Assembly (NCBI RefSeq): GCF_001194135.2
Contig: NC_068995.1
Span: 37,946,760 to 38,007,635 of the forward strand
Reading direction: 5' to 3'
DNA length: 60,876 nt
DNA from: Octopus bimaculoides
Lineage: Eukaryota
Positions 6,251 to 35,000 of this stretch are shown here, one piece after another. The position numbers and the translations under genes were made by a program. Numbering within the stretch: the stretch's first letter is position 1; every line of letters begins with the position of its first letter. A model generated the notes under the pieces. The model was not told where the DNA came from, made no database searches, and was given only the letters and a program-made list of their open reading frames with translations.

Positions 6251-6562
6251 GTGCAAAAAATCGTGCTGACTGGAACGACTCATATACTGAGAAGAGCATT
6301 ATCGCTGTGAAAACAACATCCATTCATGAATTTTATTTTATCTTTTCTTTTATTTCTTTTTTTTTTAAATANNNNNNNNNNNNNNNNNNNNNNNNNNNNN
6401 NNNNNNNNNNNNNNNNNNNNNNNNNNNNNNNNNNNNNNNNNNNNNNNNNNNNNNNNNNNNNNNNNNNNNNNNAACTGGGAATGCATACAACGAGTTTCTC
6501 TGCCCTAGATATACGGAAAACACTCGGCGAGCAATGGGAAGAAAATTTGAAGAAAGAAGAAA
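6250..6562 (+). mobile_element. 5'-truncated 3' end of an R4/Dong-like (RLE) LINE, flanked by (AAT)n on both sides; spans gap 6372-6472
   Basis: VQKIVLTGTTHILRRALSL* and the 3' UTR match 53820-54033; (AAT)n at about 6201-6248 and 6562-6580. Confidence 0.8.
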
Positions 6563-9976: not shown

Positions 9977-11167
9977 ATGACATTTGTTCAATACTTCGTC
10001 CTGATTCTGACTACATTTCTATCGGTAGTAAATTGTGACCCAATGTACAAAGATGAGTTAAGGTTGAAAGACAAATTATTATCTAATTATACGAAACATA
10101 TAAGACCTGTCGTTAATTTAACTGCTTCGGTCGATATAAACGCAGAATTATGGCTTGAATTACTCTATGGTTTGGACTACGTAAAAAATATACTTGTGGG
10201 CCAGTACTGGATTCAATTTCAATGGACGGATGAATTCTTGAGATGGAATCCATTAAACTACAATAATATTACGCGTATCTATCTACCTATAAATAAGGTA
10301 TGGACCCCGTCTATTACAATGTTGAACACATTAATGGAAACACAATCTAAAAATAATTTTCTCGAAATGACTGTGGATTTTAATGGATCTGTCACAATGG
10401 TGGAAATTAAACTACTACAAACCTTTTGTGAAATATATGTTTACAATTACCCTTTTGATGCACAGACATGCGTTATTTCTATGGGTATCCCATCGCATAA
10501 ATTTCAAGATACAAAAATAAAAGAACTTTCATGCTATCGTAAAAGTGATATATCTGACTCTGAATGGGGTATCAGCTTCTCTTGTAATGTACATGGCACA
10601 AACAACTCTTTCTCGTACGCATCCGCTACGCTGTACTTACATCACCAAATAAAGATGGGTACCATCGCTATGCTGATTCCAACAATAATGATGACTATAT
10701 TAACTATCTCTATTTTTCTCCTGCCACCAGAATCTGGTGAGAAAGTTTCTCTAGCAATGACAATATTTTTATCAAATGTCTTGTACTTTCTACAAATCCA
10801 CAATGGCTTGCCAAAAAATTCAAATCAATTCTCGCTTCTTACCTTTTATTTAATGATATTATCACTGTTAAGTGGTATCGCTACTCTTGGTTCGGTGATT
10901 ATAACCAGGCTGTATGTAAATCAGTTAGTTGACAATAACAAATTGAACCCGTCGCACCAAAGTAAAACTTCGTTAAAAAACATTAATCAAATTGCTGATA
11001 TTTCAACAGTGTCTAAGGAAGAATTTAATCCTGTACCTAAAGCAGATATTTCAAGGAAAGGGATGAAAAAAGGTATTTTCCATTACAGCCGACTTGATGG
11101 TATATTCCTAAAAATTATGATTCTAACATCGGCAATAGTTTGCATTTTCTTTATGATTCTGTCTTAG
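9977..11167 (+). CDS. Cephalopod chemotactile receptor (atypical nAChR-like Cys-loop cation channel subunit), 396 aa, single-exon CDS (CR-A)
   Basis: Signal peptide; N-terminal helix and RP motif (LLSNYTKHIRPV); W-x-D-x-x-L-x-W and VWTP motifs; Cys-loop C151-x13-C165 (CEIYVYNYPFDAQTC); M1-M2 LLPPESGEKVSL; short M3-M4 loop; terminal M4. Lacks loop A Tyr, loop B Trp and loop C vicinal CC. Collinear without gaps with 36097-37296 through M3. Confidence 0.93.
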   Translation: MTFVQYFVLILTTFLSVVNCDPMYKDELRLKDKLLSNYTKHIRPVVNLTASVDINAELWLELLYGLDYVKNILVGQYWIQFQWTDEFLRWNPLNYNNITRIYLPINKVWTPSITMLNTLMETQSKNNFLEMTVDFNGSVTMVEIKLLQTFCEIYVYNYPFDAQTCVISMGIPSHKFQDTKIKELSCYRKSDISDSEWGISFSCNVHGTNNSFSYASATLYLHHQIKMGTIAMLIPTIMMTILTISIFLLPPESGEKVSLAMTIFLSNVLYFLQIHNGLPKNSNQFSLLTFYLMILSLLSGIATLGSVIITRLYVNQLVDNNKLNPSHQSKTSLKNINQIADISTVSKEEFNPVPKADISRKGMKKGIFHYSRLDGIFLKIMILTSAIVCIFFMILS

Positions 11168-12149: not shown

Positions 12150-14075
12150 CATATTTACAACAAATGCGAAGATCATGCTTGCTCAAATATTTACAACAAA
12201 TTCAAAGAAAGAATTTCTATGATTCAAGAAGGTAAACTGACGACAAAGTACCAAAATACGCTGACGTTAAAGGAAAGCAATCACTTAACCAACTTTGAGA
12301 TGAAAACCAGCACCTTTATGGATTAAAGAAAGTTCACAAATCCAAAGAAATCCAAAACAACACAAAATGCAAAAATACATCATATACCGATGTGCCAAAA
12401 CTGCCAGCTTTAAAATGGCGCCCAATTTTTGCTGGTCCACCTTCATGCACACGTCTAAGCAACCCATTAGATACCATTCTGAAACCCCTATTTAAAAATT
12501 GCAAAGCTACATCAGAGATGATATGGAATTCCTGAACTATACCCTCCAGAAAGTACACCAAGACACAATCTTAGTCAGCTTTGACGTAACAAGCTTATAT
12601 ACGAAAACTCCACACGACTTAGGAATTGAAGCTGTTCACTTGTGGATTACATAGACTCAGGTTCCATTTCAGAGAGATTCCCGAAAGAGTTGATTTTTGG
12701 AAGGTCTCAAATGAATATTGGAGAACAACCACTTCCTCTTTCATACCTAACTGTATTTACAAATAAAAGGAACGACCATTGCACAAAAGGAGCCCAACAT
12801 ATGCGTCACTCGTTATGGATTACCTAGAGGCAAAACAATATTGCCAGCTGCAGCAAACGTTCAGTCACGACTTCGCCACTTACATTAATAGCAACTGGTG
12901 ACCTTACCTAGATGATTGCTTCATTTTCTAGGATATAAGGTAAGACCTGCAAAACTTCTATTCCATCATAAACAGGCTTCACGAACCAATACAATTTACA
13001 ATGAAATGTAATAGAAAGGAACTACCGTTTCTGGATATCGTTATCATTAAAAAATGGGAAAATATCGAAACAGCTATTTTACAAACCAATAGGCACACAC
13101 CAATACTTAAAATTCCGATCAGCACATTCCTCACAGGCCAAAAGGAAATTCCCTTTAAGCTGGCAAGAGGCAGCTGCACTATAGTTACTCACCATACACC
13201 ACAGCAAATAAGACTATATGAACTAAAATCATTCCCTAAAAGGCAAGAATATCCTGTGAATCTCACCAGTACGGCTATCTCCAAGGCCCGGAACGTTCCG
13301 CTGACACCACTGAGAAAAGCAAACCAAGAAAATAAAAAGGAAAAAACAGTTATCTCTTGTGTCGTCAGTCAGAAAGCAAGGGACTTCAACATTGTCAAAG
13401 TCGCCAAACGATATCTCACAATTCGCCAGCAATGCACCAAAATGAATGCACTCATAAAAGTCTCACAAATATAATATAAGAGACGCTAAGCACCGAACCT
13501 AAAAAACCTGCTCCCCAAGGCGAAATTTACGTCTAATATTGAACCAATGCAAGTTCAGAAATGCGGGGACACGCGATGTTGAACTTGTGAATACTTTGAA
13601 GAGGGTGGATAAATCTCCTTGAAAAACAATGAGATTTTCAAAGTTAATGCAAACATGAATTGCAAAAAAAAAAAGAAAAAAAAAGAAGAACTAGTCTATG
13701 CGCAACTTGCCTCCAATGTAAAGAATACAATATTGGTGAAACTGGAACGGGACTACATGGCAGAGTTTGTTTATAGGAAAAACAAATTAGATACCCTCTG
13801 TCAGAAACACTCCTTGCAGTGAACACTTCGCATAATTCGGAACGGAACAATATTAAGAATATCCCCCTTTCCTTAAGTTATGGTCGGACAACGAACATTT
13901 CCGAAAAAATAAAGAAGAATTCTTAGAAAGTACAAAGCACTACTGCACACAAAACAATGATATTGCACCGCACTATAACAGGACTCTCACTTTGTTTTTT
14001 TTTTTTTAAAAAAAGAACGCACATACACTTTCAATCATTTGATCTTTGAAGAGGGAAACAACCCCAGGCGGTACA
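12150..14075 (+). mobile_element. Penelope-like element (RT plus GIY-YIG endonuclease), frameshifted
   Basis: KWRPIFAGP, LVSFDVTSLYT, YLDDCFI, IQFTM...ELPFLDI, IPFKLAR; then CGDTRC*TC and CKEYNIGETGTGLHGRV (GIY-YIG region). Confidence 0.9.
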
Positions 14076-21289: not shown

Positions 21290-23152
21290 GTTTGACAAAT
21301 AGCGACCACACCTGCTCAATCTTAAGAGAACACTATGAAACGTAGTCTGGAATCTTAAAGGAATATTTTTACGAAAAAGTTTATTGAAATGAATCTATCA
21401 CTCGTGTAGTTACAAAATAAGATGTAAGTTGGCAGAGCGAGGAAAACCTTTACTGACGGAAACTTTATAAAAGAATGCATGATGAAAGCAGCAATGACTT
21501 GTGTCCAGAAAAAGCTAACATGTTTGGCTGTATCAGCCGTTCAGCAAGTTCAGTTGTGCAGAGAACAGAAGAACTTGGAGAGAATATACAGTTATAGATA
21601 CATGAGAAAGCTAAGAAAGTTTTGTGGTATTCTCTTTCAATGGATGAGTCTACTGATCTCTCTAGTACGTCACAACTTCTTGTGTTCATTCGTAGTGTTA
21701 AGTGAAACTTTGAGATTATGGAAGAAATGGCATCCGTTTGCAGTATACATAGAACAACAACTGGAGAAGATATTTTCAAAGAGGTGCAGAAAACTTCGCA
21801 AAACTATAACTTTTAGTGGAATCAGGTTCGATGCGTTACAGTCGGTGAAGGAAAAAAACATAGCAGGAGTGAGGAAAGGTTTGGTAGGGCGGATCCAGAC
21901 CAAGTTAGAGGAGCTTCAAGTTCCGAAAGCTTTGTTTATACACTGCATTATACATCAGCAAGCATTCTGTGGAAAGCATATATTTCTTGCGTACTAAAAC
22001 CGGTTACAGCTGTGGCGAACTTTATTCGGAATCATGGGCTTAATCACCGACATTCCCAAGCTTTCCATGAAAGAGTGGATTCTAATTTCTGCGACTTGCC
22101 TTACTACAGAGAAGTGAGATAGCTCAGTTGCAGTAAGGTCCTGTTTCATTTTTATAAGTTCCGAAGAGAAATAGATCTTTTTCTCGCCGAAAACAATAGA
22201 ACTGATCCACAGCTGTCAGATCCTTCATGGTTATCAAAGTTGTCAGTTTTAGGTGACGTCGCTTCTCATATGAATGAACTGAATTTAAAACGGCAAGGAA
22301 AGAATAACCTTGTCTGTGATATCTACTGAATTATTACAGCATTTCGGAGAAAGCTATCATTGTTTGTAGCACAACTTGAAGAAGGAAACTTCGATCATTT
22401 TCAGTATTTTTGAGAGTTTTGCATAGAAAATGTGGAACAGGTTAACCTCAAGTTTAAAAAGTTATTCGGGAATTAAATAAGCATTTTTCTCAAAGAGTTT
22501 CAGATCTTGACAGAATTCAGAATGAAATTCTTTTGTTTAAGAAGGCCTTTTGCTGTAATCTTGATAACATGCCAACAGAACTACAACTGGAGCTTATTGA
22601 CTTGCAAGCTTATAACTTGTTGAAAGAGAAGGAAAACGCATTGAATTTTATCGCTGCTTGCCTGCTGATGTGCTTTCAAAATTGAAAAAAAAATGCCTCA
22701 GGAATGGCATCAGTTTTTGGAATGACTTATGTTTGTGAGCAAACTTTTTCATGAATGAAATGAGTGAAGTCAATACATCGAACAAGGTTCACTGATGAAT
22801 ATATGAAGGCAATTTTTATGGTTGGCTGCAGCAATCATAAAGCAAATGTTGATGATATTTTGGAAGCAAAAACGCCAGTTTCACAAATCTCATTAACTTT
22901 TGTGCTGCTTACTTTTTAAGCAATTCAGCTATGTGCACACTTTTTCTAAAAATTCTAAGTTGGTAATATTTTGGTATTATTAAAATGTTTATTGTTTTTT
23001 TATTATTTTGTGTATTGTATGTATTGTTAAATAAATAGGATGACTATTTTTTGTGTACATTCAGTGTATTCCATATTGTACTGAATTGAACAAACTATTT
23101 ATCTGGCCCACGCTTGGCATTCTTTAAGCTACATTTAGTTTGGTGACCCCTG
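21290..23152 (+). mobile_element. hAT (Buster/SPIN/GTF2IRD2-like) transposon, decayed transposase with right TIR
   Basis: YSLSMDESTDLSSTSQLLVFIR, FIHCIIHQQAFC, NFIRNHGLNHR, SWLSKL, LQLELIDLQ; right end AGTTTGGTGACCCCTG; left TIR not seen. Confidence 0.9.
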
Positions 23153-32989: not shown

Positions 32990-35000
32990 ACTATAATGCG
33001 AAAGCATAGAAGGAAGTTAGTTTCAATGTGGCTAGACAACACGAAATCCTTTGATTATTTACCCCAATCATGGATGCTAGAAGCCCAGAACTTGCCAAGG
33101 TTTCAATAAGCGTAGTCAAAACCAGAGCTGACCTGACTTTATCGTGGCCCACCGTCTTGAAATTAAATGCTGATAGAGAATACAGTATCGCAGAGGTATA
33201 TTCCCAGGGGGCATCACTTTATGATGTTTATAGTTTCAGCAAACCCCTTGTCACTCATGTTAAGCAAGTCTGAAGCATATAACACTGGTTCACAAGGAAG
33301 CAGAAATACGAAAATTACACACTGTTTCCTCGTGGATGATTTGAAATTATAAGCAAAGAATATACTTCTTGATTTGTTTACAACAGTGTAAAAGGATATA
33401 GGGCTGGGAAGAAGAAAGCCGTAAGCCAGACTAGCAACATCTCCATCAATGACATAACAATCTCCTCTATATCTGATAAAGAATGCTACAAGTATGTATG
33501 GGTTTATGAAAACATATCTTCAGATGGCACCTGCAACTAAACACATGTCACTAAATGATATTACAGCTGAATAAAGAAAATGTGGACTTTGAAACTCTCT
33601 GCATTCAATAAAACAGTGGTTCACAATGTGTTTGCAGTGTCAGTGCTCATACTAAGATTTGGGTTGCTTGATTGGACGCTTGATTGGATCCGAGTTCTTG
33701 ATTTGGAAACCCGGAAGTTACTAACCAAAACACATAATTCCCACGTCAAAGGTGATGTCGAACGCCTTTACCTAAAACGAAAACTGGGTAGCAGAGGCTT
33801 AACATCAATCCAAACTGCTTTTGAATGTCTTAATATATCCCTTCGGCAACCTTTTTTAATCGTGAAATGTAGAAGTGTGTCCCTTGACCAAGCTTGCATA
33901 CATGAGGCTGATAACATCATAAGACTTGGATGGCAGCTAGTTCAGCAGGATTCTTTGTCTGATAATCTTAAATACATGCCCACAGGAGTCACACGTCACT
34001 ACAGCAACGTATCACGAGATGAACTGATGAGCGGGTATAAACAGAAGACCATGCATTGATAGTTTAGTACAAAGCTCAGAGATGATAGTAACACTGATCA
34101 TCAAGGCAGTCTATCATGGACTAACAAATGGATTACTATTGTCCACTGAGAAGAGCATACTTCGCAATCTAGGAACAAGAAATATCAATCAAATGCCTAG
34201 TGCACAAAAGGGACGACGATGAAGGAAAAGTAGCAAGATCTGACGACCGATGCAAAGTTTGTGACGTGATTACTGAAAATATCAACCACATCAGTAGTTG
34301 TCCGCAAATGTCATCGCGGTATTAGCTACCGATGAGACATAATGTTGTAGCTTGGATAATACATAATGAAATCCATCGGCAGGATAACCCTGAGGACAAA
34401 AAAATAAGAATCCACAGAATGGTAGAAGCCATAGCCACTCATAATAAAAAAAGAGTACTGGAGGAATAGTCCAGTGAAAATAAAGTGTAAAAGCAATAGA
34501 CCTGAGATAATGATTTGGGATAGAGAAGTGAAACTGTGTACAGTTGTGGAAATTAGCTGCCCAGCGAATGTTAACATAAAGCTGATGATCAGTGAGAAAG
34601 GGAATAGCTATGCTGAACTACTGAGAAATCTGCAGTTAGTCTATGCAGATTACAAGTTCAGGTATATACTTGTAATTATTACGGGTCTGAGATAAATACC
34701 AATCTTCATAAATTAGGCTGAATCGAAGACTATAGATCCCAGGAACTGTAAAAACCTGTAAAACATTCCACAATTTTATCAATTAAGTAGCATGCAAATA
34801 TATGCATGAGAACACATACATAAAACAAAACACAAATCTGCACATATACATACGTGCATAAATACATAACCGCATACATACATACATACATACATACATA
34901 CATACATACATACATACATACATACATAAATATATACATACATACATACATACAAAATATCCTCTTGATATTGTGGAAATTCTAATGAAGTAGCTTTGGA
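32990..35000 (+). mobile_element. R4/Dong-like (RT plus restriction-like endonuclease) LINE, decayed, about 1.1 kb upstream of CR-B
   Basis: THCFLVDDLKL (RT), DRCKVCDVITENINH (CCHC remnant), RPEIMIWDREVKLCTVVEISCP (PD-(D/E)xK). Confidence 0.9.

What the first reader, a model, noticed from the sequence alone, without database searches (positions are those of the whole stretch)
10637..10831. CR-A has lost the near-invariant pre-M1 arginine and an M2-M3 proline of the gating interface
Seen: CR-A reads L-H-H223-Q (codon CAC, 10643-10645) where CR-B reads L-Q-R223-K (CGT, 36763-36765). CR-A also has F285 (10829-10831) where CR-B has P285. Established: the pre-M1 Arg (alpha1 R209) is nearly invariant in pLGICs and, with the beta1-beta2 loop and M2-M3 Pro (alpha1 P272), couples binding to gating. 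P285 sits at 29', one position from the P272 equivalent. The alpha1 E45-equivalent is aromatic in both genes (Y68/F68). Inference: CR-A, despite an intact 396-aa ORF, may be a non-gating or obligate-heteromer modulatory subunit, or the His-His pair may confer pH dependence, which would be relevant to octopus acid avoidance.
Basis: partly seen in the sequence, partly recalled or inferred. Interest (0 to 1): 0.78.

Follow-up and report, generated by a model that had tools for sequence, protein, structure and literature searches.

The report
Octopus taste-touch receptor with rewired gating joint
One octopus "taste-by-touch" receptor gene has lost an almost universally conserved arginine. That loss is part of a wider rewrite of the joint that links ligand binding to pore opening, while the pore itself stays conserved, so this subunit probably gates abnormally or works only as a helper in mixed receptors.

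Summary
CR-A (window 9977-11167, 396 aa) reads H222-H223-Q224 and F285 where CR-B, CRT1, squid CRB1 and 21 other octopus CRs read x-R-K/R. 20 of 21 of those also have P285. H223 aligns exactly with nAChR alpha1 R209, and F285 is 29'.

The change is not isolated. CR-A's lineage-specific residues pile up in the four loops of the ECD-TMD coupling interface: 19 of 51 positions, against 0-8 of 51 in nine other lineages. Its TM helices and the rest of the protein look ordinary.

A codon model gives interface omega 1.74 on the CR-A branch versus 0.55 in the background (p=0.001). TM helices give 0.27, which rejects neutrality at p=0.0005. The ORF could not have stayed open under long neutral drift. 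CR-A is therefore neither an error nor a long-dead pseudogene. It is a maintained subunit whose coupling interface has been released from constraint or remodelled.

- The superfamily-conserved M2-M3 proline is 23' (P279), and it is intact. The 29'/30' proline is variable.
- The closest O. sinensis gene, P0002, is the orthologue of a neighbouring O. bimaculoides pseudogene, not of CR-A. No CR-A orthologue was found.
- Nothing here bears on pH sensing.

Function is inferred, not shown. The most likely role is a weak or silent homomer, or an accessory subunit in heteromers.

The parts
9977..11167 (+). CR-A: intact single-exon ORF of 396 aa plus stop. It is a chemotactile-receptor (nAChR-derived pLGIC) subunit.
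   Evidence: ORF. Pfam Neur_chan_LBD and Neur_chan_memb. CRT1 structures 9e6b/8eis at E=1e-110 and 1e-107 over the full length. AF2 model has mean pLDDT 79 with beta-sandwich plus M1-M4.
9977..10036 (+). Signal peptide MTFVQYFVLILTTFLSVVNC. The gene call on record starts at M23 and omits it.
   Evidence: It is homologous to the N-terminus of P0002.
10166..10189 (+). End of beta1 and the beta1-beta2 turn (aa 64-71, YGLDYVKN). F68Y and N70K are unique to CR-A.
   Evidence: The AF2 model places the turn at 68-71.
10427..10471 (+). Cys-loop (aa 151-165, CEIYVYNYPFDAQTC). Both cysteines and YPFD are kept, including D161, the usual salt-bridge partner of the pre-M1 Arg. N154Y, A155V, T157N and E162A are unique.
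   Evidence: The salt-bridge role is from PMC4778918 and PMC4795631.
10631..10657 (+). Pre-M1 segment (aa 219-227, LYLHHQIKM). The basic cluster R-R-K is replaced by H-H-Q, and five of nine positions are unique to CR-A.
   Evidence: In the AF2 model beta10 ends at residue 223.
10640..10648 (+). Codons CAT CAC CAA (H222 H223 Q224). The sister genes read CGT CGT AAA, so both R-to-H changes are G-to-A transitions at CpG.
10736..10807 (+). M2 pore helix (aa 254-277). GEK (-1'/0') and L265 (9') are kept. The outer end is changed: L271F, H275 at 19' where others have D/E, and N276 at 20' where others have K.
10790..10846 (+). M2-M3 linker region (aa 272-290, LQIHNGLPKNSNQFSLLTF). Eight of 19 positions are unique. 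P279 (23', 10811-10813) is retained. K283N lies at 10823-10825 and P285F at 10829-10831.
   Evidence: The conservation of the 23' Pro is from PMC4795631.
10346..10348 (+). S124, which aligns with CRT1 E104 (the vestibule acidic ring that tunes Ca2+ permeation). It is D/E in 17 of 22 CRs.
   Evidence: The function of E104 is from bioRxiv 10.1101/2025.03.03.641191.
36097..37296 (+). CR-B: intact 399-aa CR subunit with the canonical interface (R223 at 36763-36765, P285 at 36949-36951). It is the orthologue of O. sinensis P0020.
   Evidence: There are 14 kb of collinear flanks at 81-88% identity. dS is 0.15. Only 4 of 51 interface positions are unique.
47367..47621 (+). Remnant of a further CR gene (ICD to M4) with an in-frame stop. 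It shows birth-and-death turnover in the array.
   Evidence: tblastn.

Best explanation
CR-A is a real, selectively maintained subunit gene of the octopus chemotactile-receptor family. It lies in the tandem array that also holds CR-B; in O. sinensis that array also holds the CRT1 orthologue.

Since it split from its nearest paralogue, which happened before the O. bimaculoides / O. sinensis split, selection on it has been partitioned. The TM helices and pore remain under purifying selection. The four elements that join the ligand-binding domain to the pore (beta1-beta2 turn, Cys-loop, pre-M1, M2-M3 linker) have evolved at or above the neutral rate.

The loss of the pre-M1 arginine arose by a CpG G-to-A transition. 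The whole R-R-K cluster became H-H-Q. These changes, together with P285F, K283N, D/E275H, F68Y, N70K and four Cys-loop changes, are parts of that single shift.

Inferred consequence: the canonical Arg-Asp lock between beta10 and the Cys-loop is gone, so CR-A by itself should couple binding to opening poorly. It may give weak or silent homomers, or poor surface expression. It most likely serves as an accessory subunit in heteropentamers with neighbouring CRs. There it would alter efficacy and, lacking both outer acidic rings (S124, H275), permeation.

Shown: the sequence facts, the rarity of the changes, the regional pattern of selection and the genomic context. Inferred: every functional statement.
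For: - Sequence and register.
- Arg is invariant in 21 other CRs and P0171. It is present in 181 of 185 related domains and is 94% conserved superfamily-wide (PMC4795631).
- CR-A has 10 unique departures at otherwise invariant columns, against 0-4 for the others.
- Lineage-unique residues: interface 19/51, TM helices 4/69, rest 39/254. The sister P0002 has 5/51 (Fisher p=0.002), the pseudogene has 8/51, and seven other lineages have 0-7/51.
- An unbiased 15-aa scan peaks only at 58-87, 153-167, 213-237 and 263-302. Block permutation gives P=0.0009.
- ML codon model on five taxa: interface omega 1.74 versus 0.55 (p=0.0013); TM 0.27 versus 0.29, with TM=1 rejected at p=0.0005; interface versus TM on the CR-A branch p=1e-6.
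- The result holds without codons 68, 222-224 and 285 (1.61 versus 0.51, p=0.002). No other terminal branch shows it.
- Interface dS (0.27-0.30) is like the gene's (0.25), so there is no sign of conversion from a distant donor.
- ORF survival under neutrality is 0.05 at d=0.05 and 0.003 at d=0.10, against a branch dS of about 0.25.
- Pre-M1 Arg to Ala is non-activating in ELIC and unexpressed in GLIC (PMC4778918).
Against: - There is no expression, protein or electrophysiology data for CR-A.
- Interface side chains are surprisingly replaceable in an alpha7-GluCl chimera; the 'no wild-type contact left' construct still gates (PMC11601209).
- His next to the retained D161 could still form a charge-assisted bond.
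- Known accessory nAChR subunits keep the pre-M1 Arg (my own knowledge, not tested here).
- Omega greater than 1 is not significant (p=0.06-0.13), so relaxation and positive selection cannot be separated.
- The interface partition was defined after seeing the finding.
- The analysis rests on five taxa, a home-made codon model, one genome and no orthologue.
- Only about 10 of the 26 O. bimaculoides CRs were sampled.
Confidence: 0.45

Rival explanations
1. Compensated interface. The many interface changes offset one another, for example through a His223-Asp161 bond or the new K226. CR-A would then be an ordinary homomeric ligand-gated CR, and the arginine loss would have no functional meaning.
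For: - In the alpha7-GluCl chimera the interface tolerates wholesale replacement, and the first and third Arg of RRR can be mutated (PMC11601209).
- D161 and the YPFD motif are kept.
- The AF2 model is confident across the interface, with block pLDDT of 81-93.
- The ORF and TM helices are under selection.
Against: - The Arg is kept in 181 of 185 relatives and in every other CR.
- Its alanine mutants fail in ELIC and GLIC.
- An omega of 1.6-1.7 over 51 codons is more change than compensating for one or two hits would need.
Confidence: 0.2
2. Recently inactivated or never-expressed gene. CR-A would be drifting towards pseudogene status in a birth-and-death array, and the open frame would be a leftover.
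For: - The array holds a neighbour with a nonsense codon (P0004psi) and two degraded remnants.
- No orthologue was found in O. sinensis, O. vulgaris or the SRA-derived proteins.
- Whole-protein rate is similar to the pseudogene's (51 versus 41).
- An ORF survives a short neutral period with P=0.28 at d=0.02.
Against: - TM-helix omega is 0.27 on the CR-A branch and neutrality is rejected (p=0.0005).
- Interface dN is about equal to the full branch dS, so the interface has been free for the whole branch while the TM helices were constrained. That pattern is not one of recent death.
- There are no stops or frameshifts in 396 codons.
Confidence: 0.15
3. Adaptive new gating mode. Positive selection rebuilt the coupling interface, and H222, H223 and H275 together with D161 form a proton- or Zn2+-sensitive switch.
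For: - The interface omega point estimate exceeds 1 (1.74; 1.61 without the flagged codons).
- Three new histidines lie in elements that adjoin at the interface: pre-M1 and 19'.
- pH-gated pLGICs that use His/Glu clusters exist (SsCl, PMC13065796; GLIC, PMC5760087).
Against: - Omega greater than 1 is not significant (p=0.06 and 0.13).
- Both R-to-H changes are CpG transitions, the commonest mutation at Arg codons.
- No functional data exist.
Confidence: 0.12
4. Restorative RNA editing. A-to-I editing of the middle A of CAT, CAC or CAA would recode H222R, H223R and Q224R. The protein would then regain the arginine, as in the harm-permitting model for coleoids.
For: - Both R-to-H changes are genomic G-to-A substitutions at a conserved site, the class the harm-permitting model predicts to be tolerated in O. 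bimaculoides neural genes (PMC6881472).
- All three codons have A at position 2.
Against: - The 301-nt RNA around the site shows no unusual structure (z=-0.33), and no inverted repeat covers it.
- The 5' neighbour is C in all three codons.
- The prior for any given A being edited at a useful level is low.
- Editing would not explain the other roughly 17 interface changes.
Confidence: 0.03
5. Sequencing or assembly error, or a private allele of the sequenced animal.
For: Only one assembly supports the sequence, and the protein cluster has a single member.
Against: - Three adjacent codons and 19 interface residues differ, with synonymous differences as well.
- The gene lies in a gap-free 11-kb block.
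- dS to its nearest paralogue is 0.38, so it is an old, distinct locus.
Confidence: 0.03

Closest known systems
Octopus bimaculoides CRT1 (chemotactile receptor for terpenes 1; PDB 8EIS, 9E6B-D, 9YI4)
   Same: - Full-length homologue with 49% identity and E=1e-110.
- Same length class with a short ICD.
- Same Cys-loop YPFD, M1 Pro, SGEK, 9' Leu and 23' Pro.
- Aromatic residue at the alpha1-E45 position.
- Same chromosomal array, judging by the O. sinensis order P0002, CR-B orthologue, CRT1 orthologue.
   Different: - CRT1 has R202-R203-K204, D255 (19'), K263, P265 and E104. CR-A has H-H-Q, H275, N283, F285 and S124.
- CRT1's lineage has 1 of 51 unique interface residues, against 19 of 51 for CR-A.
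- CRT1 is a proven homomeric channel. CR-A is untested.
CR-B (window 36097-37296) and its O. sinensis orthologue P0020
   Same: Tandem neighbour 25 kb downstream on the same strand, in the same family, 47% identical.
   Different: It has the canonical interface and a clear orthologue at 83% aa identity with dS 0.15. Its pre-M1 to M3 omega is 0.19.
O. sinensis P0002 and O. bimaculoides P0004psi (nearest paralogue pair)
   Same: Closest relatives of CR-A, at 57-58% aa identity and dS 0.38-0.42. They share a subclade-specific Cys pair (C186/C203).
   Different: - Both keep R223 and K224. P0002 keeps P285, while P0004psi has L285.
- P0004psi carries a nonsense codon at position 42.
- They are orthologues of each other, not of CR-A.
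Engineered or disease pre-M1 Arg mutants of pLGICs (ELIC R199A, GLIC R191/192A)
   Same: Loss of the beta10 Arg that salt-bridges the Cys-loop Asp.
   Different: Those are single laboratory substitutions in otherwise wild-type interfaces, and they give non-activating or unexpressed channels (PMC4778918). CR-A is a natural, long-maintained gene in which the surrounding loops have changed as well.
Accessory or structural subunits of heteromeric nAChRs (alpha5, beta3)
   Same: The proposed role is the same: a subunit that does not drive activation but tunes efficacy and permeation in heteropentamers.
   Different: Those subunits keep the pre-M1 Arg and a conserved interface (my own knowledge, not tested here). 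Co-assembly of CR-A is untested.

Membership tests
Pentameric ligand-gated ion channels (Cys-loop / Pro-loop receptors) | Neur_chan_LBD plus Neur_chan_memb domain architecture, with a beta-sandwich ECD and four TM helices | tested here: met
   Pfam E=6e-33 and 3e-12. More than 130 PDB pLGIC chains match. The AF2 model shows beta strands plus M1-M4.
Pentameric ligand-gated ion channels (Cys-loop / Pro-loop receptors) | Cys-loop with two cysteines 13 residues apart and the [F/Y]PxD motif | tested here: met
   C151...YPFD...C165.
Pentameric ligand-gated ion channels (Cys-loop / Pro-loop receptors) | Pre-M1 arginine that salt-bridges the Cys-loop Asp (94% conserved) | tested here: not met
   H223 (CAC) stands in its place. 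Arg is present in 181 of 185 related domains and in all other CRs. This is a highly conserved feature rather than a strict requirement, so membership by homology stands.
Pentameric ligand-gated ion channels (Cys-loop / Pro-loop receptors) | M1 kink proline and M2-M3 23' proline | tested here: met
   P235 and P279 are present. Their conservation is from PMC4795631.
Cephalopod chemotactile receptors (CRs) | Closest homology to characterised CRs rather than to neurotransmitter nAChRs | tested here: met
   CRT1 scores E=1e-110 and squid CRB1 2.5e-41, against 1e-28 to 1e-35 for 5-HT3A, nAChR alpha1 and alpha7. CR-A nests inside the octopus CR tree.
Cephalopod chemotactile receptors (CRs) | Single-exon gene of about 390-400 codons in a tandem array with other CRs | tested here: met
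   CR-A has an uninterrupted ORF. The array order is P0003, P0004psi, CR-A, CR-B, and the CRT1 orthologue comes next in O. sinensis.
Cephalopod chemotactile receptors (CRs) | Non-acidic (aromatic) residue at the alpha1 E45 position, and no vicinal loop-C cysteines | tested here: met
   Y68, where other CRs have F and 104 of about 172 related domains have E. There is no CC pair in the sequence.
Cephalopod chemotactile receptors (CRs) | Expression in sucker sensory epithelium and activation by poorly soluble ligands | not testable with these tools
   No transcript or functional data were reachable. The exact 396-aa product is not on record in any assembly.
Accessory (non-transducing) subunit of heteromeric pLGICs | No or weak homomeric currents, co-assembly with other subunits, and a change in their properties | not testable with these tools
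   There is only indirect support: the interface-specific shift in omega and the reported heteromerisation of CRs.
Pseudogene | Disrupted frame, or neutral evolution (omega about 1) across the whole gene | tested here: not met
   There are no stops or frameshifts. TM-helix omega is 0.27 and neutrality is rejected at p=0.0005. ORF survival under neutrality is below 0.05 beyond d=0.05.

The most novel reading that the evidence does not exclude
Positive selection, not mere relaxation, rebuilt the whole ECD-TMD coupling interface of one octopus chemotactile receptor. A histidine triad (H222, H223, H275) replaced the universal Arg-Asp lock, giving a subunit that gates, or modulates gating, in response to a different cue such as protons or metal ions. 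It would be the first natural pLGIC known to work without the pre-M1 arginine.
Probability: 0.12. Interest if true: 0.8.

Novelty: new variant of a known kind. Interest (0 to 1): 0.52.

Why it matters
The pre-M1 arginine is one of about half a dozen residues conserved across pentameric ligand-gated channels from bacteria to humans. Why the coupling interface is so conserved is still argued, because laboratory mutants of it can be both lethal and tolerated.

CR-A is a natural experiment on that question. Selection has kept its pore helices and reading frame while all four coupling loops changed, including that arginine.

If CR-A is expressed, it tells one of two things. Either a pLGIC can gate without the Arg-Asp lock, or sensory receptor families create dedicated non-transducing subunits. 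The second would add a combinatorial layer to octopus taste-by-touch coding.

It also gives clean, cheap experiments: H223R, interface swaps, and co-expression with CR-B or CRT1. If CR-A is instead silent and unexpressed, it is an ordinary step in the birth-and-death turnover of a chemoreceptor array.

Tried and rejected
- **Orthologue check.** The closest O. sinensis protein, P0002, first looked like a positional orthologue. I rejected this because P0002 is collinear at 83-87% nt identity with a different O. bimaculoides locus, P0004psi in L004. In addition, dS for CR-A versus P0002 is 0.42, against 0.15-0.21 for true orthologues.
- **O. sinensis interval.** The interval that should hold a CR-A orthologue (CM016874.1:13,732,290-13,753,403) could not be fetched, because no called protein lies in it.
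- **Whole-gene acceleration.** This is not significant (Tajima 59 versus 46, p=0.24), so "fast-evolving gene" is not the explanation.
- **Homologue searches.** Two searches returned only 22 and 28 proteins. The full set of 26 O. bimaculoides CRs could not be assembled. The exhaustive search is clustered at 50% identity and was used only for column statistics.
- **Exact-protein look-up.** The 396-aa product gave no hit, so there is no transcript evidence.
- **Primary CR papers.** PMC7605239, PMC10228259, PMC10262778 and PMC11055638 are not held. The bioRxiv supplements were not useful.
- **RNA-editing idea.** The local RNA fold has z=-0.33 and no inverted repeat covers the site, so there is no support.
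- **Gene conversion from a divergent donor.** Interface dS is normal and none of the sampled CR clades carries the CR-A interface residues.
- **Other ORFs in the window.** Pfam found no domains in five of them.
Full report
**What is there**

The window is part of Octopus bimaculoides chromosome CM046615.1, at roughly 37.947-38.008 Mb. It holds two intact single-exon genes on the + strand: CR-A (9977-11167, 396 aa) and CR-B (36097-37296, 399 aa).

Both genes carry Neur_chan_LBD and Neur_chan_memb domains. Their best solved relatives are the octopus chemotactile receptor CRT1 (9e6b/8eis, E=1e-110 for CR-A) and squid CRB1 (8eiz). These score far ahead of 5-HT3A and nicotinic receptors. They are therefore members of the cephalopod chemotactile receptor (CR) family.

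Neighbouring loci show a tandem array: P0003, a nonsense-bearing gene (P0004psi), CR-A, then CR-B. In O. sinensis the CRT1 orthologue follows next.

**Checking the observation**

- CR-A: L221-H222(CAT)-H223(CAC, 10643-10645)-Q224(CAA) and F285 (TTC, 10829-10831).
- CR-B: L-Q-R223(CGT, 36763-36765)-K and P285 (CCC).
- Position 68 is Y in CR-A and F in CR-B.

The register is also right. H223 is 12 residues before the M1 proline and K256 is 0'. In muscle alpha1, R209 is 12 residues before P221 and K242 is 0'. I checked the alpha1 segment against PDB chains, and it matched at 100% from residue 198. F285 is therefore 29' and alpha1 P272 is 30'.

The AlphaFold model of CR-A (mean pLDDT 79) ends strand beta10 exactly at residue 223. 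It places residues 278-286 in the M2-M3 loop.

**How unusual it is**

All 21 other octopus CR sequences retrieved have Arg at 223 and K/R at 224. So does P0171, which was found later.

I aligned 207 domains from 148 representatives of the nearest 50%-identity clusters in a 1.8-billion-protein library. The column is Arg in 181 of the 185 domains that have a residue there. At least one of the four exceptions, the single His (P0044), is probably a one-residue misalignment.

A published balanced set of 561 pLGICs gives 94% Arg, with no substitution above 2% (PMC4795631). The Arg salt-bridges the Cys-loop Asp. Its alanine mutant does not activate in ELIC and is not expressed in GLIC (PMC4778918).

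The proline is a weaker case.
- P285 is Pro in 20 of 21 close CRs, and Leu in P0004psi.
- In the wider sample, Pro sits at 285 in only 11 domains and at 286 (the alpha1 P272 position) in 89, with Ser there in 65.
- Several cephalopod CR-like representatives have no proline there at all.
- The M2-M3 proline conserved across the superfamily is 23' (GLIC P247, 88%). CR-A keeps it as P279.

**The change is not isolated**

CR-A carries 10 unique replacements at columns that are otherwise invariant in the family. Every other member carries 0-4.

I then counted residues unique to each lineage, leaving out each lineage's own orthologues. CR-A has 19 unique residues among the 51 positions of the four ECD-TMD interface elements:
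- beta1-beta2, residues 64-71
- Cys-loop, 151-165
- pre-M1, 219-227
- M2-M3, 272-290

For comparison, its sister P0002 has 5 of 51 (Fisher p=0.002), the neighbouring pseudogene has 8 of 51, and seven other lineages have 0-7 of 51. In the TM helices (4 of 69) and the rest of the protein (39 of 254) CR-A is ordinary.

A 15-residue sliding scan that assumes nothing about structure gave the same picture. CR-A exceeds the maximum of eight other lineages only at 58-87, 153-167, 213-237 and 263-302. Random placement of four blocks of the same sizes reaches 19 hits with P=0.0009.

Besides R223H and P285F, the set includes:
- R222H, K224Q and T226K in pre-M1
- F68Y and N70K in the beta1-beta2 turn
- N154Y, A155V, T157N and E162A in the Cys-loop
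- D/E275H (19'), K283N and others in the M2-M3 region

The Cys-loop cysteines, YPFD with D161, the M1 proline, SGEK and 9' Leu are all retained.

**Selection**

Pairwise dS places the split of CR-A from its nearest relatives at 0.38-0.42. That is before the O. bimaculoides / O. sinensis split, where dS is 0.15-0.21 for true orthologue pairs.

I wrote a GY94-type codon model with these features: five taxa, F3x4 frequencies, synonymous time shared across partitions, and CR-A as the foreground branch. It gave the following.

| Partition | CR-A branch omega | Background omega | Test |
|---|---|---|---|
| Interface | 1.74 | 0.55 | equal: p=0.0013; CR-A=1: p=0.059 |
| TM helices | 0.27 | 0.29 | CR-A=1: p=0.0005 |
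| Rest | 0.85 | 0.82 | no difference |

On the CR-A branch, interface versus TM helices differ at p=1e-6.

Dropping the codons that triggered the finding (68, 222-224, 285) leaves 1.61 versus 0.51 (p=0.002). No other terminal branch shows the shift, including the pseudogene. Counting estimates by the Nei-Gojobori method agree.

A simulation shows that a 399-codon ORF of this composition stays open with probability 0.28, 0.05 and 0.003 after 0.02, 0.05 and 0.10 neutral substitutions per site. The CR-A branch dS is about 0.25. Whole-protein rate is not significantly raised.

The gene has therefore been kept as a membrane protein, while its coupling interface alone changed regime for the whole length of the branch.

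**Origin of the substitutions**

The sister genes read CGT CGT AAA where CR-A reads CAT CAC CAA. Both R-to-H changes are G-to-A transitions at CpG, the most mutable kind of site. P285F needs two steps (CCC to TTC), and the CTC intermediate is the state seen in P0004psi.

**Orthology correction**

The closest O. sinensis protein, P0002 (57% identity), at first looked like a positional orthologue. It is not. It is collinear at 83-87% nt identity, flanks included, with an O. bimaculoides locus 16.7 kb upstream of CR-A (L004:15385-16566). That locus has an in-frame TGA at codon 42.

No CR-A orthologue appeared in two homology searches. The O. sinensis interval that should contain one is 21 kb long and similar in length to the O. 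bimaculoides interval, but it could not be fetched.

**Mechanism**

Shown:
- the sequence facts
- the rarity of the changes
- the interface-specific shift in selection
- the retained constraint on the pore helices
- the array context

Inferred: without the beta10 Arg and the adjacent basic cluster, and with altered partners in all three apposed loops, CR-A should couple ligand binding to opening poorly on its own.

CRs are reported to form homo- and heteropentamers, and only a few of the 26 have been characterised. The most economical reading is therefore a subunit specialised for heteromers, where other subunits drive gating.

CR-A also lacks both outer acidic rings. It has S124 at the position of CRT1 E104, which tunes Ca2+ permeation, and H275 at 19'. 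It could therefore lower Ca2+ permeability as well.

I give this reading 0.45. The rivals are:
- a compensated and normally gating interface, 0.20. The alpha7-GluCl work shows the interface is more tolerant than conservation suggests (PMC11601209).
- recent death, 0.15
- an adaptive new gating mode such as pH or Zn2+ sensing through the three new histidines, 0.12. The omega estimate exceeds 1, but not significantly.
- restorative A-to-I editing of CAC to CIC (Arg), 0.03. This fits the harm-permitting model for coleoids (PMC6881472), but local RNA structure gives no support.
- artefact or private allele, 0.03

**Comparison with what is known, and novelty**

CR-A is a member of the pLGIC superfamily and of the CR family by homology, architecture and genomic context. 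It fails one highly conserved feature, the pre-M1 Arg.

I found no description of a CR, or of any characterised pLGIC, that lacks this Arg with a co-ordinately remodelled interface. However, the primary CR papers could not be read here. I class it as a new variant of a known kind.

Interest is moderate. It is a clean natural experiment on binding-gating coupling and a candidate accessory subunit in a topical sensory system. It rests on one genome, five taxa and no functional or expression data.

Noticed in passing
L004:15385-16566 (O. bimaculoides CM046615.1, about 16.7 kb upstream of CR-A, outside the window): The true orthologue of O. sinensis P0002 has an in-frame TGA at codon 42 (AGA to TGA in the conserved H-I-R-P motif). 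It also has L at the 29' proline. It is either a unitary pseudogene or an assembly error. The record annotates only a 177-aa C-terminal product.
   Followed up: partly
window 47367-47621 (+): A remnant of another CR gene (ICD to M4, 35-48% identical to family members) with an in-frame stop lies 10 kb downstream of CR-B.
   Followed up: partly
window 10532-10534 and 10583-10585 (CR-A C186, C203): CR-A, P0002 and P0004psi share two extra cysteines in the beta8-beta9 / pre-loop-C region, where all other CRs have Y/F/L and G/D. This may be a subclade-specific disulfide near the ligand pocket.
   Followed up: no
window 9977-10042 and 36097-36267: The gene calls on record start at internal methionines: CR-A at M23 (374 aa) and CR-B at M58 (342 aa). 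This cuts off the signal peptide. The full ORFs start at 9977 and 36097 and align with the N-termini of relatives.
   Followed up: yes
L007:10001-11203 (O. sinensis P0171, next to the CRT1 orthologue): This CR reads SGKK instead of the family-wide SGEK, so the -1' glutamate of the selectivity ring is a lysine. It also has L at position 68. It is another array member with a non-canonical key residue.
   Followed up: no
L004:16775-17515 and L001:13086-13784: A heavily degraded CR-like remnant (25-29% identity) lies just downstream of P0004psi/P0002 in both species. This pseudogene is therefore older than the species split.
   Followed up: no
window 10346-10348 (S124) and 10799-10801 (H275): CR-A lacks both outer acidic rings. 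It has S where CRT1 has E104 (D/E in 17 of 22 CRs), and H at 19' where others have D/E.
   Followed up: partly
window N-runs at 6372, 17706, 28154, 29821, 31702, 39289, 41550, 46267, 51054 and 59367: Of the ten assembly gaps (4341 N in total), seven (28154, 29821, 31702, 39289, 41550, 51054, 59367) run into ORFs listed; six of those show (TA)n- or (CA)n-type dinucleotide repeats at a gap edge, while the 59367 gap does not. The three shortest gaps were not examined. The gaps seen probably mark unresolved microsatellites.
   Followed up: no
window 13001-13474, 21479-21997, 33580-34059, 38175-38750 and 56346-56816: These ORFs of 150-190 aa between and after the CR genes have no Pfam match. They are probably decayed repeats. 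Several window segments match multiple non-collinear places in the O. sinensis loci.
   Followed up: partly
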